Below, in pieces: positions 29,876 to 44,485 of a stretch of DNA of 64,000 nt. Position numbers and translations under genes: made by a program. The DNA lies in IMG/VR virus record IMGVR_UViG_3300032116_000004, positions 186,001-250,000 of that record. One strand, 5' to 3'. Every line of letters begins with the position of its first letter. The stretch's first letter is position 1. The notes beneath the pieces were generated by a model that searched no databases, was not told where the DNA came from, and was given only the letters and a program-made list of their open reading frames with translations.

Positions 29876-30390
29876 TGACTGCCTGGGTAGATCAAATCAA
29901 GGAAACCATACCTGATTACGCCAAGGACACTCGTCTCAACATTGATGCAGTGATCAAACGCTCGTCTTTGCCCATAGAAGAAGCAGAAGCCGTGGCTTTG
30001 GCGGCTGCCTTTGCTACAGGCAATACGAAACTGTGGACCTGGATGCAGGGCCAGATCGCAGACCAAAAGGAAGCCGAGGCGGCCATCACAGCCGCTAGTC
30101 TAATGGCCATGAACAATGTATGGTATCCCTACGTCGAAATGGCCGAAGACGAGCGACTCACTGGTTTGCCAGCACAACTACGCATGAATGCTATTAGCTC
30201 CCATGGTGGGACGACCAAGGCTCGATTTGAGAGCTATAGTCTAGCCGCCAGTATCGTGGGCAAGTGCCACTTCTGCGTAAAAGCGCACTACGAAACACTC
30301 AAGAAGGAAGGCTACTCAGTAGAACAACTGCGAGACATCGGTCGGATCGCCGCAGTGATCACAGCAGTGGCTCGAGTGCTCAATAGCTAA
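29875..30390 (+). CDS. ahpD: Alkyl hydroperoxide reductase D
   Basis: MAMNNVWY, GKCHFCV..H; coupled to ahpC. Confidence 0.92.
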   Translation: MTAWVDQIKETIPDYAKDTRLNIDAVIKRSSLPIEEAEAVALAAAFATGNTKLWTWMQGQIADQKEAEAAITAASLMAMNNVWYPYVEMAEDERLTGLPAQLRMNAISSHGGTTKARFESYSLAASIVGKCHFCVKAHYETLKKEGYSVEQLRDIGRIAAVITAVARVLNS

Positions 30391-30430
30391 ATGTTACCAT
30401 GGCGGAGTTTAGTCTTTAAATACTCCGCCC

Positions 30431-31615: not shown

Positions 31616-32511
31616 AAAAGTTTTTATTATCAATTGCCATTGCATTGGCGGCATTTTCTTCACACGCTCAACAGCAGATTTCTATAGTGTGGCCATTTGG
31701 CATGGGCGACACGCAGGCACAATATAGTCGCAGTCTAGTAGAAGAACTCAACAAGAATCAAAAGGCCTACACTTTCATCTTAGAAAATCGCCCAGGGGCC
31801 GGAGCTACCATTGGTGCCAAACATGTGGCAAGCACACCCAATTCTATTTTGTCCGCGTCCACAGCATTCTTTGTGAGACCTAACTTTTATCCTGAGGAAA
31901 GTCACAGTGTAGCAGACTTCCGGCCCTTGATGACACAGTGTGCCGCGCCCATGGTCATTGTGAGCAAACGATATCGCAATTGGAACGAAGTTGACAAATC
32001 AAAATCCATCAACATTGGCATTTCTGGGCTGGGTGCTACATCGCACTTGATGGCCATGGAGATTGTCAAGCAATATCCCAATGCTCAACCTGTGCCCTAC
32101 AAGGGCACTCGCGAAGCCAGTATAGATGTGATTGCAGGCAATATTGAACTCAGCGTGGCATTCTTGGGCGAGGTAGAAGGATTCCTTGATCGCGGTGATT
32201 TGTATGCTTTGGGTATTTCGGGCAGGAAAAAAGTGCGCGGCATAGCCACACTGGAAAGCCAAGGATTTGCTGGAGTGGGCGAAGTGGTCAACATGCACAG
32301 TCTACAAGTGCCACGATCCATGCCCGACTCACAGTATCAACAACTGCGCGGCATGATCATGCAAGCCGCTCGTGCTGATTCAGTCCAACGGGCCTATGCC
32401 GTGGACTACTGCGAATCCAGCAATCTTGATGCCATAGCCACACAGCGTTGGTTTGATTCACAGGTTGCCCTGTGGAAACGCCTGAGCCAAGGTGTGAAAC
32501 TGGCTAAATAA
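31612..32511 (+). CDS. Bug/TctC periplasmic binding protein
   Basis: Signal peptide, ENRPGAG..IG, VPYKG. Confidence 0.9.
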   Translation: MKKFLLSIAIALAAFSSHAQQQISIVWPFGMGDTQAQYSRSLVEELNKNQKAYTFILENRPGAGATIGAKHVASTPNSILSASTAFFVRPNFYPEESHSVADFRPLMTQCAAPMVIVSKRYRNWNEVDKSKSINIGISGLGATSHLMAMEIVKQYPNAQPVPYKGTREASIDVIAGNIELSVAFLGEVEGFLDRGDLYALGISGRKKVRGIATLESQGFAGVGEVVNMHSLQVPRSMPDSQYQQLRGMIMQAARADSVQRAYAVDYCESSNLDAIATQRWFDSQVALWKRLSQGVKLAK

Positions 32512-32656
32512 AAATGGCAGCGCCGGTCAGGTGATCGACGCCGGTTACAACGACGCCTAGGGTAGCAAACCCTTTTACCAGCATGATATGCCTGGAACGC
32601 CGAACCGTAGCGAGCAATCGCAAGCACATTTAAACTACCAAATTTGGATATAAAAA

Positions 32657-33616
32657 ATGAGCAAAACTACTAAGATTCGTTGGGTTATAGCCCATGAGCC
32701 TTTGAACCTTTTCCTTCGTGCCGCTGAAGATTTTGAGCGTCGTGTAAACGAACAACAAAGCGAGCACAAGATCGAAGTGGAAATCATGACCTTGACAGAA
32801 TACAGCCAGCGTTACAACGATGGTGTCGTCATCACCAAGCACGATCTCTTGGATCTCATGGAACAGGGCAAAATTGAAATGAGCCAGATGTATACCACAT
32901 GGCTCGCAGAACGCTATGAGCAAGACTTCTTGGCATTCGATCTACCATTCCTGTTCCGGGATCACGAGCATGCTACTCGCGTGTTCGAGAGCGAGATCGG
33001 CGAAGGTCTGTTACAGAAACTCACAGACAAGTCAAACGTGCGTGGCCTTTGCTACACATATTCCGGTGGTTTCCGCCAGATGATCGCTAACAAGAAAGTT
33101 TCTACTCTAGAAGAACTTGCTGGCACACCTGTGCGTTCAAACCGTAATCCTGTGGCACAAGCAACTATCGCTGCCTTGGGCATGAAGCCTGTTGTGGCCG
33201 AAGTTGAAGATCTGCGTCGTGTTGTTGTAGAAGGTCAAGCCGAAGGTGGCGAAACCAACTATCCTCGCATGTATCCTCTGCGCCACAATGAAGTCACCAA
33301 GTCAGTGATCGACACTGGTCACAGCTTGTTCTTGACATCGATGATCATTGGTGATCAGTTCTGGTCATCATTGAGCCCAGAAGTGCAGGCCGTGATCAAG
33401 ACTGCCGCTATCCTGGCCGGACGTGAAGAGCGTGCTGAAACCATCCGTGATGGTGCTCGTGCCGAGAAGCGTCTAGTGGAAGAAGAAGGCGCCAACATCG
33501 TCAAGTGGACACAAGAGCAACGTGAAGCCGCCAAGGTTGCACTGAGTGGTGTTTACGATCAGTTCCGTGATTCATTCACACCTGGTCTCATTGAGGCGAT
33601 TGAAAAGAAGGCTTGA
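32657..33616 (+). CDS. dctP: TRAP transporter substrate-binding protein (DctP-like)
   Basis: FDLPFLFRD, GGFR, EGGET; no evident signal peptide. Confidence 0.8.
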   Translation: MSKTTKIRWVIAHEPLNLFLRAAEDFERRVNEQQSEHKIEVEIMTLTEYSQRYNDGVVITKHDLLDLMEQGKIEMSQMYTTWLAERYEQDFLAFDLPFLFRDHEHATRVFESEIGEGLLQKLTDKSNVRGLCYTYSGGFRQMIANKKVSTLEELAGTPVRSNRNPVAQATIAALGMKPVVAEVEDLRRVVVEGQAEGGETNYPRMYPLRHNEVTKSVIDTGHSLFLTSMIIGDQFWSSLSPEVQAVIKTAAILAGREERAETIRDGARAEKRLVEEEGANIVKWTQEQREAAKVALSGVYDQFRDSFTPGLIEAIEKKA

Positions 33617-33636
33617 TAAGTAGGCAAGCATAAAAC

Positions 33637-33664
33637 AAAAACCCTACCAAGTGTAGGGTTTTTT
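33637..33664 (+). terminator. Intrinsic terminator
   Basis: AAAAACCCTAC-CAAGT-GTAGGGTTTTTT. Confidence 0.85.
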
Positions 33665-33687
33665 GTTGTAAAAAGGTAAACCAGAGG

Positions 33688-33716
33688 TTGACCTTATATA
33701 AATAAACCTATACAAT
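33688..33716 (+). promoter_or_regulatory. sigma70-type promoter for leaderless leader ORF
   Basis: TTGACC-17-TACAAT, ATG 7 nt downstream. Confidence 0.8.
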
Positions 33717-33723
33717 ACACACT

Positions 33724-33840
33724 ATGATGAAAACTTTAAGACCTTATTCGATATCATTTATGCAGAAGGAGCCAACAAGTCTCTTGTGGCACCCCACCTG
33801 CCTACGTAATGATGCGATTGGTCCGGAGGGTTCTGAGTAG
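33724..33840 (+). CDS. Putative attenuator leader peptide (38 aa)
   Basis: MMKTLRPYSISFMQKEPTSLLWHPTCLRNDAIGPEGSE*; 33 distinct codons. Confidence 0.65.
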   Translation: MMKTLRPYSISFMQKEPTSLLWHPTCLRNDAIGPEGSE

Positions 33841-33867
33841 AAATCAGATTGTAAAAATTATTCTACA

Positions 33868-33906
33868 CAGGACCCCGGAACTAAAAACTCCGGGGTTTCT
33901 GTTTTA
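33868..33906 (+). terminator. Attenuator-type intrinsic terminator
   Basis: CAGGACCCCGGA / TCCGGGGTTTCTG followed by TTTTAT. Confidence 0.8.
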
Positions 33907-33925
33907 TACACAAAGGAAAAAGAAG

Positions 33926-34105
33926 TTGACAGAAAAAATAGATTACAGTAAAATTGCCGATCGTGTTGTCGAACAAGCATTTGAGCATAGTGGGTTTGTC
34001 CTAGATGAACATGATATGCAACGATTGCTCCAAGGCAAGATAGATCGGGCTCGAAAAGAAATCGATGCTAGGGCTACATGTCCAGTCTGGCACACTGATC
34101 GATAA
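33926..34105 (+). CDS. Small hypothetical protein (59 aa)
   Basis: AAAGGA SD, TTG start; overlaps a TTGACA-17-TAAAAT match. Confidence 0.45.
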   Translation: MTEKIDYSKIADRVVEQAFEHSGFVLDEHDMQRLLQGKIDRARKEIDARATCPVWHTDR

Positions 34106-34106
34106 T

Positions 34107-34311
34107 CGAGCAAAGTGTAGTGGGAAACGAGGTCCCAGAGCGCACTCTAAACATGCTCTAAACGGGCGGGGTCCTGGATTGAAATCTCCGGCGGTAACGG
34201 AGAAAGTAAGATAGGCAAGCGGAGGATGTCTCCGCTTTGGCTCTGGCAACAGAGCCCATATTCAAACACATGACCGAGCAGTCAAGTCAATGAGTCGTGT
34301 GTTTGAATATG
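34107..34311 (+). ncRNA. Unassigned structured RNA
   Basis: Hairpins TCTCCG/CGGAGA, AAGCGGAG/CTCCGCTT, GGCTCTG-GCAA-CAGAGCC, 14-bp stem 34257-34270/34298-34311. Confidence 0.45.
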
Positions 34312-34314
34312 CAT

Positions 34315-34404
34315 GGGGGTTGTTCTCTACGGCGGACTGTAAATCCGTTGCCTTTAATATGTAGAGTGGCCGGCGATTAGGTTCGATTCCTTCAGTCCCC
34401 ACCA
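34315..34404 (+). tRNA. Atypical tRNA-Tyr(GTA)-like gene lacking a canonical D-arm
   Basis: CTGTAAA anticodon arm, TTCGATT loop, CCA. Confidence 0.6.
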
Positions 34405-34409
34405 AACAT

Positions 34410-34484
34410 GGTCTCATAGTATAATGGTTAGTATAGCGGCTTGTCACGCCGTTGATAGGAGTTCGATTCTCCTTGGGACCGCCA
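34410..34484 (+). tRNA. tRNA-Asp(GTC)
   Basis: Cloverleaf, CCA. Confidence 0.92.
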
Positions 34485-34490
34485 AACAAT

Positions 34491-34565
34491 TCCAAGGTAG
34501 CACAGCGGTAGTGCAGAAGACTGTTACTCTTTTGGTCGCAGGTTCGATCCCTGCCCTTGTAGCCA
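34491..34565 (+). tRNA. tRNA-Asn(GTT)
   Basis: Cloverleaf, one acceptor mismatch, CCA. Confidence 0.88.
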
Positions 34566-34571
34566 TGATCT

Positions 34572-34661
34572 CCCCCGCTAGCTCATGGAGAGCAGGTCGG
34601 CTTATAACCGATTAATCTAGATAAGGTCCAGGATGAGGTTCGATTCCTCAGCGGGGGACCA
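34572..34661 (+). tRNA. tRNA with TAT anticodon and long variable region
   Basis: CTTATAA loop, short D-loop, CCA. Confidence 0.8.
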
Positions 34662-34670
34662 AAAAAATAT

Positions 34671-34747
34671 TACGGCGTAGTTCCAACTGGCAGAACGACA
34701 GTCTCCAAAACTGTATGATGGGGGTTCGAATCCCTCCGCCGTAGCCA
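34671..34747 (+). tRNA. tRNA-Trp(CCA)
   Basis: Cloverleaf, CCA. Confidence 0.9.
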
Positions 34748-34754
34748 ACACAAT

Positions 34755-34832
34755 GTGAAGGTGGCAGAGAGGTCCAATGCAAGAGTCTGCAAAACTCTAA
34801 AACCGTCGGTTCGAATCCGACCCTTCACTCCA
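34755..34832 (+). tRNA. tRNA-Cys(GCA)
   Basis: Cloverleaf, U73, CCA. Confidence 0.92.
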
Positions 34833-35210
34833 TTAGAATTCTAGTCGTAGGCCTATGCTGAGATTGTTTATAACCAAAGCGGATTCCATACCAGTGACCA
34901 CTTTGAGATACAGAGTGCGGTTACGGCCTTGGAAATAATCTGCCGCAAAATAGTTGGCTACCATCCAAGTCACGAAATGCAGATCCACTGCTTGCGTGGT
35001 AGGATGCCGGCCCAACAACGGATTACGTTCATAGTAGCCTTCAGCATATCTGCGAGTCATGTTGCGTGTGGTCGCCCAATCACCCAGAATGGCCGCGTTG
35101 GATGCCAAGAACCAATTTTGTTGCTCTGTGGTCCAGTTAGACCAGGCCCAGCTAGCACTGGGCAACCATAGCAGGATGGCCAAGAGTTTTTTCACAACAA
35201 TATTTAACAA
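34833..35210 (-). CDS. Secreted/membrane hypothetical protein within the tRNA array
   Basis: Signal peptide KKLLAILLWLPSASWA, C-terminal Phe. Confidence 0.65.
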   Translation of the reverse strand: MLNIVVKKLLAILLWLPSASWAWSNWTTEQQNWFLASNAAILGDWATTRNMTRRYAEGYYERNPLLGRHPTTQAVDLHFVTWMVANYFAADYFQGRNRTLYLKVVTGMESALVINNLSIGLRLEF

Positions 35211-35211
35211 T

Positions 35212-35301
35212 GGAAGCGTGGCAGAGTCTGGTTTATTGCACCGGTCTTGAAAACCGACGATCCGAAAAGGTCCGTGAGTTCGAATCTCACCGCTTCCGCC
35301 A
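35212..35301 (+). tRNA. tRNA-Ser(TGA)
   Basis: Long V-arm, G73, CCA. Confidence 0.93.
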
Positions 35302-35306
35302 AACCT

Positions 35307-35396
35307 GGAGAGGTCCCATAATGGTATTGGAGCGGATTGCTAATCCGTCGGTCGGCGTAATCCGGCTTCTGGGTTCAAGTCCCAGTCTCTCCGCCA
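35307..35396 (+). tRNA. tRNA-Ser(GCT)
   Basis: Long V-arm, G73, CCA. Confidence 0.93.
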
Positions 35397-35399
35397 TAT

Positions 35400-35591
35400 C
35401 CCGTCCATAGCAAACGTGATTGCTGTCGCTTACTCAGCGTTACGAGTCGGGGGCGGAGAACCGTTAAGCAGAGTGCCCTTTTATTGGGAGTCCAAACCGC
35501 TGTGCTGAATCACAACAGCGAAGAAGTTAACAACGTGATGACAGAGTAGACAACTCAGGACGGGGCGATGTGGAAACGTGGCCGTCCACCA
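35400..35591 (+). ncRNA. Unassigned structured RNA ending in ACCA
   Basis: GGACGG can pair with CCGTCC at 35401 or 35582; ends ACCA. Confidence 0.4.
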
Positions 35592-35621
35592 AATATGTTT
35601 TTAGACAGGTGTGAATTCACT

Positions 35622-35696
35622 GGTGTGGGTAGTGTAATGGTAGCACACTTGATTGTGGATCAGGTAGTGCGGGTTCGAATTCCGTCCTTCACCCCA
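35622..35696 (+). tRNA. tRNA-His(GTG)
   Basis: G-1:C73, CCA. Confidence 0.9.
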
Positions 35697-35705
35697 AATG
35701 TGTGA

Positions 35706-36173
35706 TCAAGTGGGTGTTACTTGCCCGGTAACAGCATCCACATGCACAGGTCGGCGTGTGACAAATGCGAAATCATAGAAAGGATTGAAGCGATAGTCTA
35801 CTGTTTTGCGCAGTCTGCAGAATGTCCAGGTGTCGGTGATTCCGGCCTTGGCCATGGCCTGCTGTGCTTGGGCGCAACTCAGTTTGGGTGGATACACAAA
35901 CGCCGTGCATTCGGCCACTCGCGAATCATCAATCACAGGTGAGGTGGCATGTCCTGATGTATCAATGGTTATGGCATAGGGTTTTTGATCTTGAGAACCT
36001 TGCCAAACAGTATACATGGTTCCGCCTGCATTGGCTTCGGCGAGATAAAATTGCGATGCGCTCTGATAGAGATCCATGAGACTCTTGCCGCCCCATATTT
36101 GCTGATCGTATGTCAAGGGCGATAACACCCCCAGTCGTCTGAGATGTTTCTTTACAGCGGCTATGATTTTCAT
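35706..36173 (-). CDS. Hypothetical protein
   Basis: 155-aa ORF with SD, inserted in the array. Confidence 0.65.
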   Translation of the reverse strand: MKIIAAVKKHLRRLGVLSPLTYDQQIWGGKSLMDLYQSASQFYLAEANAGGTMYTVWQGSQDQKPYAITIDTSGHATSPVIDDSRVAECTAFVYPPKLSCAQAQQAMAKAGITDTWTFCRLRKTVDYRFNPFYDFAFVTRRPVHVDAVTGQVTPT

Positions 36174-36213
36174 GGTTAATCCCCTTTATTCGAGTATTTA
36201 TAGGTGTTTTTTT

Positions 36214-36290
36214 GCCCCGGTGACGGAATTGGTATACGTGTTGGTCTTAGAAACCAAATTTTAGGAGTTCGAGTCTCCTCTGGGGCACCA
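36214..36290 (+). tRNA. tRNA-Leu(TAG), short variable region
   Basis: Cloverleaf, A73, CCA. Confidence 0.9.
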
Positions 36291-36303
36291 AATTTATTAG
36301 TAT

Positions 36304-36380
36304 GCGGTAGTGACGGAATCGGCATACGTATCGGACTTAAAATCCGAGTTTTGTGGGTTCGAGTCCCACCTTCCGCACCA
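36304..36380 (+). tRNA. tRNA-Leu(TAA), short variable region
   Basis: Cloverleaf, A73, CCA. Confidence 0.9.
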
Positions 36381-36385
36381 TACAA

Positions 36386-36464
36386 CGGAGTGTAGGCTAG
36401 TCTGGTCCAAGTCGCCTGCTTTGGGAGCAGGAAACCGCAGGTTCGAATCCTGCCACTCCGACCA
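36386..36464 (+). tRNA. tRNA-Pro(TGG)
   Basis: CGGAGTG acceptor, CCA. Confidence 0.93.
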
Positions 36465-36465
36465 A

Positions 36466-37659
36466 TCACAAAGGATGTCTTAATAGATCTTTTAAACAAC
36501 GATTTGATTCATCTAGCGTGAGTCTTTTTAATTTGTCATGAAATCGCTGTTTGGCAAAATCCAGGTTAGCATCAAACCTTTGTTGATTTTGATTCCAGAG
36601 TCTGACAGTATCAACAGGATTTGTGAGCAAGTGCTTGTTATTACTCACGGCGGTATACAATCTATCTATAGGGTTATCTATGATGTCATACGAATGATCA
36701 ATGATGTCGTCAAACATATCAAATCCAAAACTACGATAAAGATCTACGGTTCCTCGACTAGATATCATGATAGGAAAATTCCGAGCATATATCGTGTGGA
36801 TAAATTTTTCATCGATGTTAATAGTTGGCTCGCAGAAAAGTCTATTTGAAACCAATTCTACAAAACTTGTTCTATACAAAGGACGCAGATTGTTTCCAAA
36901 ATTGTTCACGTTATCAAAGTCTAGCACTGTGTCAGATCCAGCCTCTGTCAAATAGATGTCGTTGCCATTATCATCACCAAATCGTAAATTATCAGGATTT
37001 GATATCATCTTGTCAAACCCTTGGCACATGATCTGTTTTACATGATCATTGTGATCATGATATTGCCAAGGGTTGTGATCAAGGAAATCCCTGCTAGGCA
37101 ATTTATCTAATTGTTTGTATAAATGACCAGTGCTGATATGGCAGCAATTATCTAGATCTAATCCATACAAAAGGCTACAGAGAGCCAATCGATGAGTGCG
37201 CATTTGTCTATTCAGTGCGATGCCTATTTTTTTAGATTGTTGATTCTTGTCGTTGATTGGGGATAATTTTGCATATAGATCATCTTCAGGAACGGTAAAC
37301 CATTTGCCTACTCTTACATTGGGCAGATTGAAATATCCATCATGATAATGATTACCTTGTAACATAAAGACAATGGTTTTTTCAGGAGATGCGAGCGCCA
37401 GGTTCCTGATGTCTTGGAAAATAGTGGGTTCTTGGCCTTCAGTCCAATAATCATACTCCTGTGGGAAATTGCCGTAATGAGGACTGTCTTCCAAAATCAA
37501 AAACAACAGGTTTTCGTTGAGATCAAGGTTTAACCATTGATTCCAAGATGTTATATGCGTAAAAACACTGTCGTGCGGCACAGAAATGGCATCAGTCACT
37601 GTGTCAAATAATTTTCGTGCCATGGGCAATCTGTGTGGCACATGAGTAAAATATTTCAT
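36466..37659 (-). CDS. 'TEK-motif' putative glycosyltransferase
   Basis: FVELVS..INIDEKF..NFP..GFDMFDDIIDHSYD; ATG 37659 chosen to avoid tRNA overlap. Confidence 0.6.
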   Translation of the reverse strand: MKYFTHVPHRLPMARKLFDTVTDAISVPHDSVFTHITSWNQWLNLDLNENLLFLILEDSPHYGNFPQEYDYWTEGQEPTIFQDIRNLALASPEKTIVFMLQGNHYHDGYFNLPNVRVGKWFTVPEDDLYAKLSPINDKNQQSKKIGIALNRQMRTHRLALCSLLYGLDLDNCCHISTGHLYKQLDKLPSRDFLDHNPWQYHDHNDHVKQIMCQGFDKMISNPDNLRFGDDNGNDIYLTEAGSDTVLDFDNVNNFGNNLRPLYRTSFVELVSNRLFCEPTINIDEKFIHTIYARNFPIMISSRGTVDLYRSFGFDMFDDIIDHSYDIIDNPIDRLYTAVSNNKHLLTNPVDTVRLWNQNQQRFDANLDFAKQRFHDKLKRLTLDESNRCLKDLLRHPL

Positions 37660-37681
37660 ATACAAATTTATGTAAACCCAT

Positions 37682-37759
37682 GCCCCCTTGGACAAATAGG
37701 TAAAGTCGTCTCTCTCAAAAGGAGAAGTTCTCTCGGTTCGAATCCGAGAGGGGGTACCA
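37682..37759 (+). tRNA. tRNA-Leu(CAA), short variable region
   Basis: CTCAAAA loop, A73, CCA. Confidence 0.85.
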
Positions 37760-37765
37760 AACAAT

Positions 37766-37841
37766 GCAGGTATAATTCAGCTGGAAGAATGTCACGTTGC
37801 CAACGTGGATGTCGTCGGTTCGAACCCGACTACCTGCTCCA
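37766..37841 (+). tRNA. tRNA-Gly(GCC)
   Basis: Cloverleaf, U73, CCA. Confidence 0.92.
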
Positions 37842-37915
37842 GAATTATGTCCCAGGCCTCCGACTATTGGCCACTCGTTGATGCGCAGTGGTTGCGTCTG
37901 TGTTTTCTTTTTCTT

Positions 37916-37990
37916 GCATCGTTAGTTTAATGGTAAAACGCCCTCCTTACAAGTGGGATAGCGGTGGTTCGATTCCATCACGATGCACCA
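37916..37990 (+). tRNA. tRNA-Val(TAC)
   Basis: Cloverleaf, CCA. Confidence 0.88.
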
Positions 37991-37992
37991 AT

Positions 37993-38068
37993 GCCGCTTT
38001 AGCTGATGTGGTCATAGCACCGGTTTGAAGCACCGAGGAACCTGGTTCGATCCCAGGGGGCGGCACCA
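37993..38068 (+). tRNA. tRNA-Phe(GAA)
   Basis: TTGAAGC loop, CCA. Confidence 0.88.
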
Positions 38069-38074
38069 CTCTGT

Positions 38075-38148
38075 TGGGGGTTAGTTAAATGGTATAACCA
38101 CGGATTTTGATTCCGTTATTATAGGTTCGATTCCTATACCCTCTGCCA
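38075..38148 (+). tRNA. tRNA-Gln(TTG)
   Basis: Cloverleaf, CCA. Confidence 0.88.
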
Positions 38149-38154
38149 ATCATC

Positions 38155-38230
38155 GGGACGTTAGCTCATTAGGTAGAGCAGTAGACTTTTAATCTATTGG
38201 TGGTGGGTTCGAATCCCGCACGTCCTACCA
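38155..38230 (+). tRNA. tRNA-Lys(TTT)
   Basis: Cloverleaf, CCA. Confidence 0.93.
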
Positions 38231-38234
38231 ATAT

Positions 38235-38309
38235 GGTAATGTAGCATAACGGTAGTGCTCCACCTTCATACGGTGTTCAGTGTAAGTTCGACTCTTACCA
38301 TTACCACCA
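38235..38309 (+). tRNA. tRNA-Met(CAT), elongator
   Basis: TTCATAC loop, G1-C72, CCA. Confidence 0.85.
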
Positions 38310-38314
38310 AATAT

Positions 38315-38390
38315 CCGGCCGTGGTCTAATGGATAAGGCAACGCTCTTCTAAAGCGTCCGATGTGGGTTCGATTCCTGCCGGCCGGGCCA
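38315..38390 (+). tRNA. tRNA-Arg(TCT)
   Basis: Cloverleaf, CCA. Confidence 0.92.
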
Positions 38391-38392
38391 AA

Positions 38393-38468
38393 CGGTCCTT
38401 AACTCAATGGATAGAGTGCCAGTCTTCGAAACTGGAGGTTGGGAGTTCGAGTCTCTCAGGACCGGCCA
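38393..38468 (+). tRNA. tRNA-Arg(TCG)
   Basis: Cloverleaf, CCA. Confidence 0.92.
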
Positions 38469-38470
38469 AT

Positions 38471-38544
38471 GCTCGGGTAGTTAAATGGTATAACGGCCGA
38501 CCGATAATCGGCTATTCCTGGTTCGATCCCAGGTCTGAGCACCA
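38471..38544 (+). tRNA. tRNA-Ile(GAT)
   Basis: CCGATAA loop (C33), CCA. Confidence 0.88.
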
Positions 38545-38635
38545 ATTTTGCCAAATCAGTCAACGCTGAACACTGCTGTGACGTTATATAAGTGTAGGAC
38601 ATAATTCCTACAGTTTCTAACCAAAGGAGAACTTT

Positions 38636-38845
38636 ATGAAACTCGTAACCACACTCGTAGCAAGTTTGTTTGCAGTATCCGCTTTCGCACAAGCACCTGC
38701 CAAGAAAGAAGAAAAGAAAGAAGCAGCCAAGCCTGCCGCAGCCGCTCCTGCACCTGCCGCCAGTAAGCCTGCCGACAAAAAGGCTGAGCCTGCCAAAAGC
38801 GACGCTAAAAAAGACGATAAAAAAGCCGAAGCCGCTAAGAAGTAA
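38636..38845 (+). CDS. Small secreted Lys/Ala-rich protein (Asr-like)
   Basis: Signal peptide ...SAFAQ then KKEEKK/PA repeats; AAGGAG SD. Confidence 0.7.
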   Translation: MKLVTTLVASLFAVSAFAQAPAKKEEKKEAAKPAAAAPAPAASKPADKKAEPAKSDAKKDDKKAEAAKK

Positions 38846-39071
38846 TCCAACCAGGTATATCCTGGTCCATGTAGAGGGCAACGAAGATGGGTATTCCATC
38901 GACGATGAAAACATCTATGTAGGCTACAGGAGACCTGAAGTGGTAAAAGATCTCAAAGATACTGTCGCTGATGACGAGGATCTTTCGGATTATATAAAAA
39001 CCCGTTTGTTTTTAGCCCGACAGTTGGCCTTGATGAAAGCAATGGGATATGATTTAAGGACCCGAGTCTGA
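38670..39071 (+). CDS. Hypothetical protein (start uncertain, probably 3' of 38845)
   Basis: Open frame ending YIKTRLFLARQLALMKA. Confidence 0.35.
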   Translation: MQYPLSHKHLPRKKKRKKQPSLPQPLLHLPPVSLPTKRLSLPKATLKKTIKKPKPLRSNPTRYILVHVEGNEDGYSIDDENIYVGYRRPEVVKDLKDTVADDEDLSDYIKTRLFLARQLALMKAMGYDLRTRV

Positions 39072-39086
39072 CTCGGGTTCTTTTTT
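39057..39086 (+). terminator. Intrinsic terminator immediately before tRNA-Ala
   Basis: AGGACCCGAGT-CTG-ACTCGGGTTCT-TTTTT. Confidence 0.75.
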
Positions 39087-39160
39087 GGGGGATTAGTTAA
39101 ATGGGATAACATCGGCTTTGCAAGCCGAGATTGAGAGTTCGATTCTCTCATTCTCCACCA
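39087..39160 (+). tRNA. tRNA-Ala(TGC)
   Basis: G3:U70, CCA. Confidence 0.92.
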
Positions 39161-39169
39161 TCCAACTCG

Positions 39170-39199
39170 TTGACAGTCACTAAATATTTTTGTTATAAT
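39170..39199 (+). promoter_or_regulatory. sigma70-type promoter
   Basis: TTGACA-18-TATAAT with TG. Confidence 0.75.
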
Positions 39200-39220
39200 C
39201 AAGTAACCAAGGAGACTGCG

Positions 39221-39382
39221 ATGGAACAGAAAAAACAACCAGTGCCAGAATATTTCTTCAGTGCCGGTGAATGGGACAGACTGGGTTGTGGTCCTTTGCC
39301 ACCAGAGCGCAACAAGGATCGTCTGCAGATTCCGGAAAAGAGCGTGCAAAACAAAGATGACGCTGGCCTTGGCTACGATTGA
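39221..39382 (+). CDS. Small hypothetical protein (53 aa)
   Basis: AAGGAG SD. Confidence 0.55.
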   Translation: MEQKKQPVPEYFFSAGEWDRLGCGPLPPERNKDRLQIPEKSVQNKDDAGLGYD

Positions 39383-39620
39383 TGTGATCATGGCCAACAT
39401 GGTTTTTGCTGTTGCTGTGATGTGGCTACTGATTGAAGATTTTCGCACAGAAATGCGGAATTTGTCGGCTAAGTAATTTTACTATGCAGGAGTATGCACC
39501 CAAGGGCTCTTGAAAAATCTCTTGGAATTGTTGATGTGGTGAGAGGCCACAGGTCACGCGAGGACCGTACATGTCCTGATAGTCTCGTGAAAGAATTGTT
39601 GTATGAAGCAAAGAGAAAAG

Positions 39621-39855
39621 TGTTCAAGACATGGGTTCGAATCCCATCACCTCCACCTAAGTGTATAAGGTATATTTAGGTGGGGGTGCTCCGGTAATCG
39701 ATTGAGCAAAGAGTAAATGAGTGGACAACACGATAGGCGATGATCGTTAATCAAGCAAACTTTATAACTGCAAACGATGAGTTATACGCTCTAGCCGCCT
39801 GATAGGCACTAGATGAGGATTTTCCGGTTGTGCCTTATAACCCAAACAACCGGTT
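39621..39855 (+). ncRNA. ssrA: Circularly permuted (two-piece) tmRNA
   Basis: T-arm plus CACCTCC-ACC (39631-39657) precede the 5' strand GGGGGTG (39682-39688) with G3:U70; tag ANDELYALAA* at 39770-39802 after ATAACT; outer ends approximate. Confidence 0.9.
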
Positions 39856-39882
39856 GACTCTTTTTTATTTTCCTGTTATAAT
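39854..39882 (+). promoter_or_regulatory. sigma70-type promoter
   Basis: TTGACT-17-TATAAT with TG. Confidence 0.85.
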
Positions 39883-39889
39883 TAACAAT

Positions 39890-39901
39890 CGTTCTTTAAC
39901 A
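39890..39901 (+). promoter_or_regulatory. rrn-type boxA antitermination site
   Basis: CGTTCTTTAACA versus rrn TGCTCTTTAACA, just after the start site. Confidence 0.65.
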
Positions 39902-39916
39902 ATTCACAGCATCAAT

Positions 39917-39991
39917 GCTCGGTTCGTCTATCGGTTAGGACACCGCCCTTTCACGGCGGGAAGAGGGGTTCGATTCCCCTACCGAGTACCA
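39917..39991 (+). tRNA. tRNA-Glu(TTC)
   Basis: Cloverleaf, CCA. Confidence 0.93.
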
Positions 39992-40520
39992 TAAGCAAAC
40001 ATATCGGCCCCAGTGTCATACCTAATAGGTCTGCGGCAACACTGGGTGAAATCCTGTCGCAGGGACAAAGGTATGTTTGCTTATGGTAAATGGTGTGAGC
40101 GAAAGAACGCCTCGCCAGCAATACCCTGACCATCGGGGGAGATAACCACCCTAAGCCGCTGTAACCGTAATAGGACGCACTCGTTGGCTACGAGATGAAC
40201 ACGCGAGAGGGGGACTGGGCACCAGGCTGATACCCTGGGCAAAATGTCTGGACCTTAAACACAAGATGGTGTCATTTATCATTTCAACATAGACAGACAG
40301 TGATGCATACTATATTCCTGGCGGTACTACAAGCCCGGGTCACTCACTGCTATGTTTAGCCATACTGGATCGATCCGAGTATACGGTAGTTTTCCAGTCA
40401 CTGGCAACCCCAATCGGTCTGGGCTACACTCTGTGCTCTGTATGATCTGACGGAACGTTGATCCTCTACATCACAGGTCACTGAGCATCAACACAGACTC
40501 CGCATAATCGTAAGCGGAAC
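39988..40520 (+). ncRNA. Large unassigned structured RNA region
   Basis: 18-bp closing stem 39988-40005/40070-40087 and many hairpins; no + strand ORF of 60 aa or more. Confidence 0.5.
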
Positions 40521-40527
40521 TAACAAT

Positions 40528-40602
40528 CGCGGAGTATATCAGTGGCAGATGGCGAGTCTCATAAGCTCGAGGTCAGTGGTTCGAATCCACTCTCCGCAAC
40601 CA
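40528..40602 (+). tRNA. tRNA-fMet(CAT)
   Basis: C1:A72 mismatch, CCA; anticodon stem lacks the 3 G-C pairs. Confidence 0.85.
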
Positions 40603-40608
40603 AATAAA

Positions 40609-40686
40609 GCGGGTAGATCGTGGCAAGGGGCGCCCAGCAGTCTTCCAAACTGATCATGCGGAGTTCGACTCTCCCTACCCGCTCCA
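40609..40686 (+). tRNA. tRNA-Gly(TCC)
   Basis: CTTCCAA loop, U73, CCA; unusual D-arm. Confidence 0.82.
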
Positions 40687-40930
40687 GGACGTTCCGTGTA
40701 GCAACGGATAGTGCGACCCGCACGATGAGAAGTGGTGTAGCAACCACGGGTGGTCCCAGTCTAACCTAACTGGCGCTGGCAATGCGACAATCCCGAGGGT
40801 GGCGAGCGGGTGCCTACCAGCCCAAGTAGTCCTGCTGAGGGACTGGAAGCCGATGGGCCAAAGGTGGTAACACGAATCCAACCAGGACGCTGGCAGGCAA
40901 CAAAAAGACCGCGGCTCTCGGGCAAGCACT
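40687..40930 (+). ncRNA. Unassigned GC-rich structured RNA before rpoZ
   Basis: Two hairpins with identical GTAGCA loops (40693-40708, 40732-40747). Confidence 0.45.
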
Positions 40931-40952
40931 TTCTAAACACAAGGAGAATGTC

Positions 40953-41180
40953 ATGGCAAGAATCACATCAGAAAAAGCAGTAGAAGCCGTAGGTAATCGT
41001 TATGATCTAGTGTTGATCGCTAGTCGCCGAGCACGTGAGTTATCCAACGGCCATGCTCCTCACATCACGACCGACGATACTACCACAGTCAAGGCCATCC
41101 GCGAGATTGAACAAGGTCATGTGGGCAGAGATTACCTAAATAAAAACCCAGAAATAAACAAGAAAAAATCCAAATCTTGA
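40953..41180 (+). CDS. rpoZ: RNA polymerase omega subunit
   Basis: MARIT...NRYDLVLIASRRAREL...AIREIEQG. Confidence 0.92.
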   Translation: MARITSEKAVEAVGNRYDLVLIASRRARELSNGHAPHITTDDTTTVKAIREIEQGHVGRDYLNKNPEINKKKSKS

Positions 41181-41211
41181 TTTTTATTGCAAAGAGATAT
41201 ATACACATATT

Positions 41212-41646
41212 ATGCTATCATTCATACGCGAACTCACTGATCCACTGTTAGATTATCTCAAGGACGATCCAGTGCGTCCCGAGATCTCACGCGAATTCCG
41301 TGTGAGTGGTCAGCGTTTCGTGTCAGCCCTGGTAGACGATCAACCACGTGCCATGGTCTGCGTGAGCCTGCATGATTTTGTGCCTGAGACTGTGGCGGAT
41401 CTGTCGCAGGACCCTGCGGAACCCAACACAGCGATATTTTATACTATCTGGAGTTATGCTCCTGGAGCGGCCACAGAACTGTTGTTTGCCACAGTGGATC
41501 AAATCCGAGAACTTTATCCCACTGTGCGACGATTCGTCACACTGAGTCCCAAGACAGAAATGGCTCGCAAATTCCATCTACGCAACGGGGCACATGTGCT
41601 GAGAGAAAACACAGACACTGTCAACTACGAATATATAATTGCATGA
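41212..41646 (+). CDS. GNAT-like protein resembling malonyl-CoA decarboxylase C-domain
   Basis: AIFYTIWS...RFVTLSP. Confidence 0.45.
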   Translation: MLSFIRELTDPLLDYLKDDPVRPEISREFRVSGQRFVSALVDDQPRAMVCVSLHDFVPETVADLSQDPAEPNTAIFYTIWSYAPGAATELLFATVDQIRELYPTVRRFVTLSPKTEMARKFHLRNGAHVLRENTDTVNYEYIIA

Positions 41647-41810
41647 CCAAATTCACTGACACTCTACGGGCCGCGCTAGAGAAAAAACATGCCGCGGCAC
41701 ATCCTGACACCAAGTCGGATGCCAAAGATGATGGCAAAAGCAAACCTAAAAGGACACCGCCGGTGATCACGGGTAAACCAGTAAAGAAAGTCACTGGACG
41801 TGGACGCTAG
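41643..41810 (+). CDS. Small basic protein (55 aa)
   Basis: ATGA-coupled, MTKFTDTLRAALEKK... Confidence 0.55.
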   Translation: MTKFTDTLRAALEKKHAAAHPDTKSDAKDDGKSKPKRTPPVITGKPVKKVTGRGR

Positions 41811-41912
41811 TATTTGGAACTTGCCTTGGTGGCAACTGGGTTGGGGACTGGCAGTGGTAGCCAACTACATTTATTGGATCTTTGTTGATCCTGTGTTGCA
41901 TACAGAACGCAG

Positions 41913-41941
41913 TTGACCAAAAACTGCTTTTCTAGTATAAT
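41913..41941 (+). promoter_or_regulatory. sigma70-type promoter, leaderless
   Basis: TTGACC-17-TATAAT, ATG 6 nt downstream. Confidence 0.8.
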
Positions 41942-41947
41942 GCTAGA

Positions 41948-42313
41948 ATGGACTTTTACATAGATGAAGCATATCTCACTGATGTTGTAGTGCGGACTGA
42001 ATATCCTCGCTACAACGATCGCACAGAGCTGACTGCAGAAGAACTTATCTCGGTAATAAAACATCCTGCGCCTGCTGTTAGTATTGGCACCAAAGATCAT
42101 CCTGAGTTTGCTTGCCTACGTGAGCAGTTAGAACAAGATGGATATATTCAAGTTCAACGTGGTTGGTGGAACGGTGATCGTGTGTTAAAGCCATTCCAGT
42201 TAAACGATGTAAAATTTAAAAAAGGTGATCAGTTTCCCTGTGCCGCGGCCATGAACGGTCATTTAAAGTTTCGAAAACTATATAAACAAAAGAAAGGAGG
42301 GCACAATGCCTAG
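41948..42313 (+). CDS. Hypothetical protein
   Basis: Leaderless ORF. Confidence 0.65.
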   Translation: MDFYIDEAYLTDVVVRTEYPRYNDRTELTAEELISVIKHPAPAVSIGTKDHPEFACLREQLEQDGYIQVQRGWWNGDRVLKPFQLNDVKFKKGDQFPCAAAMNGHLKFRKLYKQKKGGHNA

Positions 42314-42896
42314 TGTATTTTTAGTATCAGACACGCACTTTGGTCACGCAGGTGTGTGCCGCTTCACACTCAACGACGGAGTAACCAAACTTCGTCCCTG
42401 GGATGATCCAGAGGAGATGGATGAGTTCATGATCAAGGCCTGGAACGAACGTGTCCGACCTACAGACAAAGTCTACCACTTGGGCGATGTTGTGATCAAC
42501 AGAAAAGCGTTGAAAACTCTTGCTCGTCTAAACGGTGACAAGGTCTTGATCCGCGGCAATCACGACATCTTCAGAGATGATGAGTATCGAGCATACTTCC
42601 GTGAGCTTCGTGCTTACCATGTGATGAATGGCATGATCTTGAGTCATATCCCTATCCATAGCGAAAGCCTGGGTCGGTTTGGTGTCAACATCCATGGTCA
42701 CTTGCATGCCAACCGGGTGATGAAAGCCATGCCGCCGGCATACAGGCCTGATATCATAGATCCACGTTATCATTGTGTGTGCGTGGAACAAACTGACTTT
42801 GCTCCTATCTTGTTCGAAGATGTGATCAAGCGCATCGAAGCAGAAGGTGGTACTATCGGTTTTCAAAACGGCAACGGCCCTCGAGGTGCAGATTGA
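42306..42896 (+). CDS. Calcineurin-like metallophosphoesterase
   Basis: SDTHFGH, LGD, GNHD, SH, HGHLH. Confidence 0.92.
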   Translation: MPSVFLVSDTHFGHAGVCRFTLNDGVTKLRPWDDPEEMDEFMIKAWNERVRPTDKVYHLGDVVINRKALKTLARLNGDKVLIRGNHDIFRDDEYRAYFRELRAYHVMNGMILSHIPIHSESLGRFGVNIHGHLHANRVMKAMPPAYRPDIIDPRYHCVCVEQTDFAPILFEDVIKRIEAEGGTIGFQNGNGPRGAD

Positions 42897-43063
42897 TGAC
42901 ATATCCAAGGATCAAATTCTGGGAAGCCACCATCCGCACCCCAGATGGTCAAGAGTTTAAAGACCGTGTGGGAGCAGATACGGCCGAACAGGCTCGTAGA
43001 CTTTTGCAAGAACGGCATGGCCCACGTGCAGTGCCTTACTTGCCGCGCATGATCCCCAGTTAG
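42896..43063 (+). CDS. Small hypothetical protein (55 aa)
   Basis: TGATG coupling, MTYPRIKFWEA... Confidence 0.55.
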   Translation: MTYPRIKFWEATIRTPDGQEFKDRVGADTAEQARRLLQERHGPRAVPYLPRMIPS

Positions 43064-43200
43064 GGCCACAGTCAGCCTTGCTCACTTGGCCAGCGCCAAT
43101 AAGTGCCGATAGCAAAATGACTGGGTGACGTCGGGTAATACCGCAAGAGCCGTAGATACCATAAGTCTGCGCCGGACTGGGTAACCGGCATACATATTTC

Positions 43201-44388
43201 ATGCCAAAAATCATTTCCATAGAACCTGCCATTGATCCTAATGCCAGACCTACATTCTTACTAGATTGGGAATTGACCATGAAGTGCAATCTAGACTGTA
43301 GTTACTGTCCTACTCCAGATCAGGTTCCTGTATCTATGGCCTATCATGACAATTCAGCTGATCATCCATCGTTGGAAAAATGTCTATCGACTATAGATTT
43401 CATGTATGAATATGTGGATCTTTACATGCAACAAAAACCACGATGGAATAGGTCTGTGGTGCTCAATATCTACGGTGGAGAGAGTTTGTTTCATCCAGAC
43501 ATAGAAAAGATCATGGCTGCGGTCAGAGACAAACATAAGCCTTATCGAGACAGTTGGCCATTGACTGTGACTTGCACAACCAATGGCGTCGTTGGTCCAA
43601 ATCTCATGAAGAGAGTGGTAGGCTTTGTAGATGAATTCACAGTGAGTTATCATGCGGAATCATTGTCCAAACAAAAACAACAAGTGCTAGACAATCTTCG
43701 TTTGATAAAAAATAGTGGCCGTCGTCTCAAGTGTGTTGTGCTCATGCACGGCGATGAAAAATTTTGGCCAGAATTGCAAGAAGTCATTGCTTTCTGCCAA
43801 CAAGAGAATATTCGATATCTTCCCCGGCATTTGGATGGTCATGTCAATGCCAATTATGGCCCCAAACAAATACAATGGTTCCAAAATTTATGGAATCAAC
43901 GCAGTCCTGGCCATGCCGCGATCAAACAGCGAGAAATTATTGAACACAAACAACAAACACTGACGAGCAATGTAGATCTATCTGATGTGGGCAGGGCCTG
44001 TTGCGGCGGCAGATTGATGTGTGTCAATCAAGAAATGAAAGATCCGATATTTTACATTCCTGACAATAACTTCCTGGGCTGGAAATGCAGTGTGAATTGG
44101 TATTTTTTGTATGTTAAACAACACACCGATGAAGTTTATCTCAACAAAGACTGTCGCATGAATTTTGACGGGTCTGTATCACCAATCGGTTATCTCAATA
44201 ATACCACGGAAATTTTAGATTGGCTCAAAACTAGATTCCATGGATCCAACCTTCCCGTCATCACCTGTGCCAAAAATCTTTGCACATGTGGTCTGTGCGC
44301 ACCAAAAAGCCAATCCGAATCTAACTTTCGTGAGATAATGCGTAAACATGTAGCCGATATCAATGTTTTTGATGTTGACACAGCGTGA
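43201..44388 (+). CDS. Radical SAM protein
   Basis: CNLDCSYC, GGE, TTNG, Cys-rich C-terminus. Confidence 0.9.
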   Translation: MPKIISIEPAIDPNARPTFLLDWELTMKCNLDCSYCPTPDQVPVSMAYHDNSADHPSLEKCLSTIDFMYEYVDLYMQQKPRWNRSVVLNIYGGESLFHPDIEKIMAAVRDKHKPYRDSWPLTVTCTTNGVVGPNLMKRVVGFVDEFTVSYHAESLSKQKQQVLDNLRLIKNSGRRLKCVVLMHGDEKFWPELQEVIAFCQQENIRYLPRHLDGHVNANYGPKQIQWFQNLWNQRSPGHAAIKQREIIEHKQQTLTSNVDLSDVGRACCGGRLMCVNQEMKDPIFYIPDNNFLGWKCSVNWYFLYVKQHTDEVYLNKDCRMNFDGSVSPIGYLNNTTEILDWLKTRFHGSNLPVITCAKNLCTCGLCAPKSQSESNFREIMRKHVADINVFDVDTA

Positions 44389-44411
44389 TGATTATCGTAA
44401 AATAACATTCT

Positions 44412-44485
44412 GCCCTGTTAGTTAAATGGTATAACAGTTGATTTGTAATCATCAATTGGCAGTTCGATTCTGTCACGGGGCACCA
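44412..44485 (+). tRNA. tRNA-Thr(TGT)
   Basis: Cloverleaf, CCA. Confidence 0.9.

What the first reader, a model, noticed from the sequence alone, without database searches (positions are those of the whole stretch)
39621..39855. Phage-encoded circularly permuted two-piece tmRNA with a betaproteobacterial-type tag
Seen: the 3' acceptor half (TGTTCAAGAC-ATGGGTTCGAATCCCAT-CACCTCC-ACC) lies upstream of the 5' half (GGGGGTG..GTAATCGA-TTGAGCA). They form a 7-bp acceptor stem with G3:U70, and helix 2 pairs TTGAGCA with TGTTCAA. A 12-bp hairpin spacer joins the halves, the tag reads ANDELYALAA*, and CCA is incomplete (ACC-T). Established: permuted tmRNAs occur in Alphaproteobacteria, some cyanobacteria and one betaproteobacterial lineage. 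The tag resembles beta/gamma ANDExYALAA rather than alpha tags. Inference: possibly an independent permutation in a phage whose host probably has a one-piece tmRNA; it would rescue ribosomes stalled when tRNAs are cleaved.
Basis: partly seen in the sequence, partly recalled or inferred. Interest (0 to 1): 0.75.

Follow-up and report, generated by a model that had tools for sequence, protein, structure and literature searches.

The report
Jumbo-phage two-piece tmRNA, beta type
A 316-kb uncultured freshwater jumbo phage carries a complete, circularly permuted (two-piece) tmRNA gene of the same type as Rhodocyclaceae bacteria; it is real and probably works, but it shares their permutation and is one of dozens in related phages, not an independent invention.

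Summary
ARAGORN calls a permuted tmRNA with tag ANDELYALAA, and two Rfam models match well above threshold: tmRNA_permuted at 128 bits and beta_tmRNA at 127 bits. It lies inside a 26-gene tRNA array in a 316-kb T4-type jumbo-phage record that recurs in lake metagenomes.

The "independent permutation" idea is refuted. The gene aligns along its whole length with Rhodocyclaceae two-piece tmRNAs. That includes the spacer hairpin created by the permutation, the small AGGCGAU hairpin, the pre-resume motif and the post-tag hairpin loop. Covariation supports both inter-piece helices, the T-arm and the spacer helix.

It is not unique. In a capped sample of 111 IMG/VR contigs with this junction, at least 54 fall in clusters whose representative is beta-type. 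The nearest 29 are related jumbo phages. These phage genes form a branch that is not nested in extant Rhodocyclaceae.

The phage lacks SmpB and a CCA-adding enzyme, so it must use the host's. Two-piece processing, tagging activity, the host and the trigger (tRNA cleavage) remain untested. Phage two-piece tmRNAs were already known as alpha and cyano types. A beta-type phage clade appears undescribed, which makes this a modest novelty.

The parts
39170..39199 (+). Candidate sigma-70-type promoter (TTGACA-18-TATAAT, 12/12), about 400 nt upstream of the tmRNA. It may drive the precursor.
   Evidence: An exact RNA-library contig covers 39496-39647, so RNA (or contaminating DNA) upstream of the gene is present. 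The transcription start is not determined.
39597..39657 (+). Acceptor piece, the 3' half of the tRNA-like domain. It comprises the outer P2 5' strand (39597-39602), a purine-rich unpaired stretch (39603-39620), the inner P2 5' strand (39621-39627), the T-arm (39631-39647), the acceptor 3' strand (39648-39654), discriminator A (39655) and CC (39656-39657).
   Evidence: covariation in P2 and the T-arm.
39658..39681 (+). Intervening spacer, predicted to be excised. Positions 39655-39664 pair with 39672-39681, extending the acceptor stem into a hairpin of about 18 bp in the precursor.
   Evidence: 90% paired across 37 sequences, 5 compensatory pairs. The spacer sequence is shared with the bacterial beta lineage.
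39682..39866 (+). Coding piece. It comprises the acceptor 5' strand (39682-39688, G3 at 39684), a D-loop analogue with invariant GG and UCGA (39689-39701), the inner P2 3' strand (39702-39708), the outer P2 3' strand (39725-39730), a small hairpin CGAT/ATCG with loop AGGCGATG (39731-39746), the tag reading frame, the post-tag hairpin and a U-run.
39770..39805 (+). Tag reading frame. The resume codon is GCA at 39770, the peptide is ANDELYALAA, and the stops are TGA TAG (39800-39805).
   Evidence: A conserved UAA motif lies upstream of the resume codon.
39824..39853 (+). Conserved post-tag hairpin (CCGGTTGT/ACAACCGG with a 14-nt loop GCCTTATAACCCAA), followed by a U-run at 39861-39866. The GC-rich second terminator hairpin found in bacteria and in most phage relatives is missing here.
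39854..39882 (+). Sigma-70-type promoter (TTGACT-17-TATAAT) for the next gene, tRNA-Glu (39917-39991). It marks the downstream limit of the tmRNA unit.

Best explanation
This is a functional ssrA gene of the betaproteobacterial two-piece (circularly permuted) type, inherited vertically within a lineage of uncultured freshwater T4-type jumbo phages.

Inferred mechanism:
1. It is transcribed as one precursor within or beside the tRNA array.
2. The acceptor stem plus a 10-11 bp extension folds into a long hairpin.
3. Host RNase P cuts 5' of G39682. The spacer is removed, the acceptor piece is trimmed to ...ACC, and the host CCA-adding enzyme adds the final A.
4. The two pieces stay together through the acceptor stem and the two P2 helices.
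5. Host AlaRS charges the RNA, using G3:U70 and A73.
6. Host SmpB and EF-Tu deliver it to ribosomes stalled on truncated mRNAs.
7. Translation resumes at GCA 39770 and appends ANDELYALAA, an ...LAA degron for host ClpXP-type proteases. The ribosome is then released.

The benefit to the phage would be keeping ribosomes available during infection.

Shown here: gene anatomy, family membership, structural conservation, presence in many related phages, and absence of phage SmpB and CCA-adding enzyme. Inferred: processing, charging, tagging, and when it matters during infection.
For: - ARAGORN and Rfam calls. Beta_tmRNA is the best-scoring member of its clan.
- Whole-gene alignment with Dechloromonas, Rhodocyclus and Thauera genes, including the spacer.
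- Covariation: 96% of cells paired against about 47% when partners are slid, and 17 compensatory pairs in P2 outer, P2 inner, T-arm and hairpin. The spacer helix is 90% paired with 5 compensatory pairs.
- AlaRS identity elements and an intact tag frame with an ...ALAA end.
- Short-tag relatives keep AND-x-x-[FY]-A-L-A-A.
- A 100% identical copy sits on another IMG/VR record. The 29 closest genes sit on contigs that share proteins at 45-91% aa identity and often tRNA arrays.
- A 95%-complete relative with 71% TerL identity keeps a syntenic copy with compensatory acceptor changes that preserve G3:U70.
- The locus is present in lake metagenomes from more than 10 studies.
- RNA-library contigs match the gene exactly or at 96%.
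- No SmpB, CCA-adding enzyme or integrase is found in the phage.
Against: - No direct evidence of processing, charging or tagging. The RNA data are assembled contigs without end information and could include DNA carry-over.
- The middle P2 helices of the Rfam beta model are not formed in this sequence (non-canonical marks).
- The GC-rich terminator hairpin seen in relatives is missing.
- An unconstrained co-fold does not recover P2.
- The host is unknown, so compatibility with its SmpB and AlaRS is assumed.
Confidence: 0.78

Rival explanations
1. The RNA is made but acts mainly as a decoy or modulator of host trans-translation, for example by titrating SmpB, rather than as a productive tagger. 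This would resemble the tRNA-like-domain-only molecule of mycobacteriophage DS6A.
For: The phage has no SmpB of its own. A TLD-only phage tmRNA that inhibits host tmRNA is described in PMC4131195 and PMC11915505. The middle part of P2 is degenerate here.
Against: The mRNA-like half is fully intact, with a conserved resume-codon context, a canonical degron and double stops. Tags in the clade are conserved at the peptide level. A pure decoy would not need these.
Confidence: 0.1
2. One reading: an independent permutation that arose in the phage from a one-piece gene and only converges on the beta type.
For: The phage genes form a separate, well-supported branch from extant Rhodocyclaceae genes. 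Identity to the best bacterial gene is only about 75%.
Against: The junction itself is shared with the bacterial genes, in sequence (CCACC-TAAGTG...ATTTAG-GTGGGGG) and in covarying structure. So are the gene ends, the small AGGCGAU hairpin, the post-tag hairpin loop and, in relatives, the CUUCGG terminator. An independent event would not recreate these.
Confidence: 0.03
3. It is host DNA: a bacterial ssrA captured by mis-assembly, or a partial ssrA copy serving as a prophage attachment site.
For: tmRNA genes are common integration sites, and phages often carry fragments of them (PMC9004378). Four IMG/VR contigs in my sample do carry bacterial-type genes.
Against: The gene is complete, not a fragment. 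It is flanked by phage tRNA genes and phage promoters. The same 2.1-kb context is present at 0.85-0.92 word share in many independent lake metagenomes, and an identical copy sits on another viral record. No integrase is found in the genome. GC and sequence differ from the bacterial genes.
Confidence: 0.02

Closest known systems
Betaproteobacterial two-piece tmRNA (Rfam RF01850 beta_tmRNA; Rhodocyclaceae, Azonexaceae, Zoogloeaceae and Sterolibacteriaceae, e.g. Dechloromonas, Thauera, Rhodocyclus)
   Same: - Gene order: acceptor piece, spacer, coding piece.
- Identical acceptor stem.
- Shared spacer hairpin, outer and inner P2 helices, AGGCGAU hairpin, pre-resume motif and post-tag hairpin loop.
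- ANDExxAxAA-type tag.
- CCA usually not fully encoded.

   Different: - Carried by a phage.
- About 75% identity at best.
- The middle P2 helices are replaced by a purine-rich unpaired stretch.
- The GC-rich terminator hairpin is lost in this copy.
- AT-richer sequence.
- Sits on a separate branch of the tree.
Phage-encoded two-piece tmRNAs of marine phages (OM43 phage Melnitz, pelagimyophages, cyanophages; PMC9004378)
   Same: A permuted ssrA carried by lytic myovirus-type phages of aquatic bacteria. The proposed role is maintaining the hijacked translation machinery.
   Different: Those are alpha- or cyano-type. Melnitz has a glutamine riboswitch in the gene. Here the gene is beta-type, sits in a large tRNA array in a freshwater jumbo phage, and no riboswitch was detected.
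tmRNAs of huge phages and mycobacteriophages (Al-Shayeb et al. 2020, PMC7162821; Bxz1-like phages and Bacillus phage G, PMC4131195)
   Same: Large phages with many tRNAs also encode tmRNA as part of a translation-support gene set.
   Different: Bxz1-like phages and phage G are listed without any mention of a permuted form; that they are one-piece is my own knowledge, not tested here. Some huge phages also encode SmpB, which this phage lacks.

Membership tests
Rfam RF01850 beta_tmRNA (betaproteobacterial two-piece tmRNA) | Covariance-model score above the curated gathering threshold, and the best score among clan families | tested here: met
   127.2 bits against a cut-off of 84, over model positions 1-331. 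Lower-scoring clan matches were suppressed.
Rfam RF01850 beta_tmRNA | Permuted gene order with the lineage-specific junction (spacer hairpin extending the acceptor stem) | tested here: met
   The spacer is alignable in sequence with Dechloromonas, Rhodocyclus and Thauera genes. The helix is 90% paired with 5 compensatory pairs.
Rfam RF01850 beta_tmRNA | Inter-piece helix P2 (outer, middle and inner segments) | tested here: inconclusive
   The outer (6 bp) and inner (7 bp) segments are present and covary. The middle segments of the model are non-canonical in this sequence.
Rfam RF01850 beta_tmRNA | Small hairpin before the tag, post-tag hairpin with a GCCUUGUUACCAAAG-like loop, and a terminal GC-rich hairpin | tested here: inconclusive
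   The first two are present. The terminal GC-rich hairpin is absent in the window but present in phage relatives.
Rfam RF01850 beta_tmRNA | Occurrence in Betaproteobacteria | tested here: not met
   The gene is on a 316-kb viral record with a T4-type terminase. In the tree it is not nested in the bacterial clade.
Functional tmRNA (any form) | AlaRS identity (G3:U70, A73), T-arm, tag reading frame with an Ala resume codon and a hydrophobic ...AA end | tested here: met
   Read directly from the sequence and from ARAGORN.
Functional tmRNA (any form) | Partner protein SmpB available | tested here: not met
   PF01668 is not found in the phage genome, while the controls rang. The phage must rely on host SmpB, and the host is unknown.
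Two-piece tmRNA | Precursor is cleaved into two RNAs that remain base-paired | not testable with these tools
   Only assembled RNA-library contigs were available, with no read ends.
Two-piece tmRNA | Tagging and ribosome-rescue activity | not testable with these tools
   This needs an experiment.

The most novel reading that the evidence does not exclude
Beta-type two-piece tmRNA may be chiefly a phage-borne gene family. The phage branch is large and highly diverse, with tags from 10 to 33 residues, remodelled hairpins and even an ORF inside the spacer. It is not nested within extant Rhodocyclaceae. The Rhodocyclaceae ssrA, and the second permuted copies in Oxalobacteraceae that keep their one-piece ssrA, could then descend from a phage gene that entered bacteria, rather than the reverse. 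Such phages would deliver a second tmRNA with its own tag into hosts that already have a one-piece tmRNA.
Probability: 0.12. Interest if true: 0.7.

Novelty: new member of a known kind. Interest (0 to 1): 0.35.

Why it matters
This extends the known phage two-piece tmRNAs, which were alpha- and cyano-type in marine phages, to the third (beta) lineage and to a widespread group of freshwater jumbo phages. The permutation junction behaves as a conserved, covarying processing hairpin in bacteria and phages alike.

The phage clade also offers natural experiments on tmRNA design:
- near-identical tRNA-like domains joined to very different tags;
- a spacer that tolerates an ORF;
- loss of terminators.

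It raises a testable question about which way the beta two-piece gene moved between phages and bacteria. For annotation, it is an ordinary call that ARAGORN and Rfam already make automatically.

Tried and rejected
- **Read laying.** The four RNA runs gave only short assembled contigs: exact at 39496-39647 and 39726-39795, and a 96% relative at 39590-39755. There were no molecule ends, so nothing can be said about processing.
- **Co-folding the two pieces.** An unconstrained co-fold paired the purine-rich 5' tail with the U-rich 3' tail instead of forming P2. I rejected this because the U-run belongs to terminators in relatives and the pairing is not conserved. A constrained fold crashed, and the energy is not used.
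- **Phage-encoded helpers.** Searches found no SmpB, CCA-adding enzyme, tyrosine integrase, RtcB, or RF-1/ArfB domain. The T4 Rnl1 search is uninformative because its control never rang.
- **Host inference.** The only hints are TerL relatives that infect Pseudomonadota, and anticodons that favour codons rare in GC-rich hosts; that last point is my own inference.
- **Cultured phages.** BLASTN of the gene against 50,697 phage records found only T-arm matches to tRNAs, even at E up to 1.
- **Literature.** The paper that first described the beta lineage (Sharkady and Williams 2004) is not held. The supplements of the 2025 tmRNA database paper hold no phage breakdown.
- **Herbaspirillum context.** The permuted copy is not in an obvious prophage.
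- **Prevalence among TerL relatives.** Eleven of the twelve long records are 17-60% complete fragments that lack the region, so prevalence in the lineage could not be measured.

Full report
**Observation**

- Inner P2 strand TGTTCAA: 39621-39627.
- T-arm: 39631-39647.
- Acceptor 3' strand CACCTCC: 39648-39654, followed by A-CC and then T.
- Spacer: 24 nt.
- Acceptor 5' strand GGGGGTG: 39682-39688, with G39684 opposite U39652 (G3:U70).
- Inner P2 3' strand TTGAGCA: 39702-39708.
- Reading frame GCA...GCC: 39770-39799, encoding ANDELYALAA, followed by TGA TAG.

ARAGORN calls a permuted tmRNA with that tag. Rfam gives tmRNA_permuted at 128 bits (cut-off 47) and beta_tmRNA at 127 bits (cut-off 84), both matching the full model. 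The gene unit is therefore about 39597-39866.

**Context**

The window is part of a 315,778-bp IMG/VR virus record that CheckV estimates as 91% complete. It has a T4-type large terminase. The closest cultured matches are Pseudomonas jumbo phage PA5oct (52% aa), Sinorhizobium phage Phosso and Agrobacterium phage Atu_ph07.

All 26 tRNA genes of the genome lie in this window, and the tmRNA sits among them. The same 2.1-kb stretch is present at 0.85-0.92 word share in lake and freshwater metagenomes from more than ten studies. An identical copy sits on another viral record (L056). The locus is therefore neither an assembly artefact nor host contamination. The genome has no integrase.

**Relationship to known tmRNAs**

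I scanned for the T-arm/acceptor/spacer/5'-acceptor pattern. It hit more than 120 bacterial contigs, dominated by Rhodocyclaceae, Azonexaceae, Zoogloeaceae and Sterolibacteriaceae, which is the known beta two-piece lineage. It also hit more than 119 IMG/VR contigs.

Alignments of the window gene with phage relatives and with Dechloromonas, Rhodocyclus and Thauera genes show homology along the entire gene:
- the 5' P2 strand;
- the spacer itself (CCACC-TAAGTG...ATTTAG-GTGGGGG);
- the D-loop analogue with invariant GG and UCGA;
- a small hairpin with loop AGGCGAU;
- the pre-resume motif;
- the post-tag hairpin loop.

In phage relatives the CUUCGG-loop terminator is shared too. The spacer is the sequence created by the permutation, so sharing it means one common permutation event.

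The incomplete CCA is likewise a lineage trait. In the bacterial sample, 92 of 109 genes lack the encoded A. By contrast, all 26 tRNA genes of this phage encode CCA.

**Structure under selection**

On a 37-sequence alignment (window, 23 phage genes, 13 bacterial genes), the outer and inner P2 helices, the T-arm and the small hairpin are 96% paired. Slid controls give about 47%. Seventeen pairs show compensatory changes. The acceptor stem is invariant only because the search pattern fixed it, so it carries no information.

The spacer helix that extends the acceptor stem is 90% paired with five compensatory pairs. This indicates a conserved precursor hairpin, presumably a processing signal, in bacteria and phages alike.

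The middle P2 segments of the Rfam model are not formed here. The window subclade has a purine-rich stretch instead.

**Not unique among phages**

Clustering the 111 usable viral hits and running Rfam on cluster representatives gave these results:
- The largest cluster (47 contigs, including the window) is beta-type. Its representative scores 141 bits on RF01850.
- Five smaller clusters are also beta-type.
- Other clusters are alpha-type or match only the general permuted model.

The window falls in an all-viral clade of 30 sequences (SH-aLRT 99). The contigs in that clade share protein genes with this genome at 45-91% aa identity and often carry tRNA arrays. They are related jumbo phages.

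A careful tree was built from 160 beta-type genes with alpha-type outgroups. A supported split (95/89) puts 92 Rhodocyclaceae-type genes plus four viral contigs on one side. The phage beta-type genes plus four Oxalobacteraceae copies fall on the other. The phage genes are therefore not recent captures from extant Rhodocyclaceae. The direction of transfer cannot be decided, because the root depends on AT-rich viral outgroups.

TerL relatives are numerous in IMG/VR, with 599 candidates. Only one other near-complete record was available, and it keeps a remodelled syntenic copy.

**What is already known**

- Two-piece tmRNAs in phages are documented. PMC9004378 counts 53 unique forms, mostly marine and of alpha or cyano type.
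- tmRNAs in huge phages are documented in PMC7162821.
- The 2025 tmRNA database lists 79 phage sequences.
- I found no paper describing a beta-type permuted tmRNA in a phage.
- No deposited phage genome matches this gene beyond T-arm similarity.

**Mechanism**

The phage encodes no SmpB, no CCA-adding enzyme and no RF-1/ArfB-type factor. The RNA must therefore be matured and used by host enzymes: RNase P at G39682, 3' trimming plus addition of the terminal A, AlaRS, SmpB and EF-Tu.

A consensus sigma-70-type promoter lies about 400 nt upstream (39170-39199). Another (39854-39882) directly follows the gene and serves tRNA-Glu. RNA-library contigs overlap the gene, including upstream sequence, but give no end information.

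The intact tag with an ...YALAA end argues for productive tagging rather than a pure decoy role. The proposed link to tRNA cleavage by host defences is untested. No RtcB was found, and the Rnl1 search was uninformative.

**Verdict**

This is a real, well-formed and probably functional phage ssrA of the known beta two-piece family. It is a new member in a new carrier, an uncultured freshwater jumbo-phage lineage, and not a new permutation. Interest is moderate to low for the gene itself. It is somewhat higher for the phage clade as a whole, because of its tag diversity, its remodelled variants and the open question of who gave the gene to whom.

Noticed in passing
L007:5175-5565, L095:3974-4358, L063:4320-4692 and other clade loci: Phage genes whose tRNA-like domain and P2 are 92-94% identical to the window's (L007, L095; L063 about 83%) carry quite different, long tags of 24-33 residues. 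Examples are a 31-residue tag ending ...AANEGRFALAA and a 29-residue tag ending ...ESFAV. These long tags are conserved at the peptide level across divergent contigs. The mRNA-like module seems to be exchanged or expanded independently of the tRNA-like module.
   Followed up: partly
L092, L089, L043, L071, L015, L053, L113 (alignment A1 columns about 157-193): In a subclade the small AGGCGAU hairpin is replaced by a conserved element about 35 nt longer (…GGCAATGTAGAAGCCG-TTAGGATTGGGG…CCCG). This may be a pseudoknot regained at the PK1 position.
   Followed up: no
L341:1496-2116 (G006, 331,654-bp relative): This is a syntenic tmRNA gene with several changes: a compensatorily changed acceptor stem (GGGCCTG/CAGGTCC, G3:U70 kept, CCA encoded), a non-canonical T-loop, a changed D-loop analogue, and a 345-nt spacer holding a 101-aa ORF with no Pfam or PHROG match. 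The tag is ANDEQFALAA. ARAGORN misses the gene and RF01850 scores only 58 bits.
   Followed up: partly
G001:C33:19343-19562, G002:C138:4250-4468, G003:C13:126547-126796 (L253, L254, L251): Herbaspirillum sp. CF444, H. frisingense and another Oxalobacteraceae genome have a normal one-piece tmRNA (tag ANDNSYALAA-like). Each also has a second, permuted tmRNA-type gene at another locus, with non-canonical predicted tags. These copies group with the phage genes in the tree. In CF444 the copy lies among ordinary chromosomal genes, not in an obvious prophage.
   Followed up: partly
window 40608-40683 (+): A tRNA-like element lies directly after tRNA-Met. ARAGORN misses it, and it is sub-threshold in Rfam (tRNA-Sec model, 32.5 bits). 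It has an 8-bp acceptor stem, a UCC anticodon in a 7-nt loop, U73 and an encoded CCA. It may be an unusual tRNA-Gly(UCC).
   Followed up: partly
window 34572-34661 (+): ARAGORN calls a 90-nt tRNA-Ile(UAU) that the Rfam tRNA model did not report at gathering threshold. The length is odd for tRNA-Ile.
   Followed up: no
window 27596-44485: All 26 tRNA genes of the 316-kb genome lie within 17 kb, all on the + strand, and all encode the 3' CCA. Anticodons are mostly U34 types and include UCU, UAA, UAG and UAU. By my inference this suggests a host with higher GC than the phage's 46%.
   Followed up: partly
window 39357-39476 (+) and 39981-40086: A 39-codon hydrophobic ORF lies between the upstream promoter and the tmRNA. 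A 15-nt inverted repeat (ccataagcaaacata / tatgtttgcttatgg) brackets about 75 nt just after tRNA-Glu. Exact RNA-library contigs cover 40139-40423.
   Followed up: no
L167, L170, L184, L187, L188 (Acidimicrobiia / Acidimicrobiales MAG contigs): Several actinobacterial MAG contigs match the T-arm/acceptor/spacer/5'-acceptor pattern, but ARAGORN gave no permuted tmRNA call and they sit on very long branches. They may be chance matches, unusual tRNA-like elements or mis-binned contigs.
   Followed up: no
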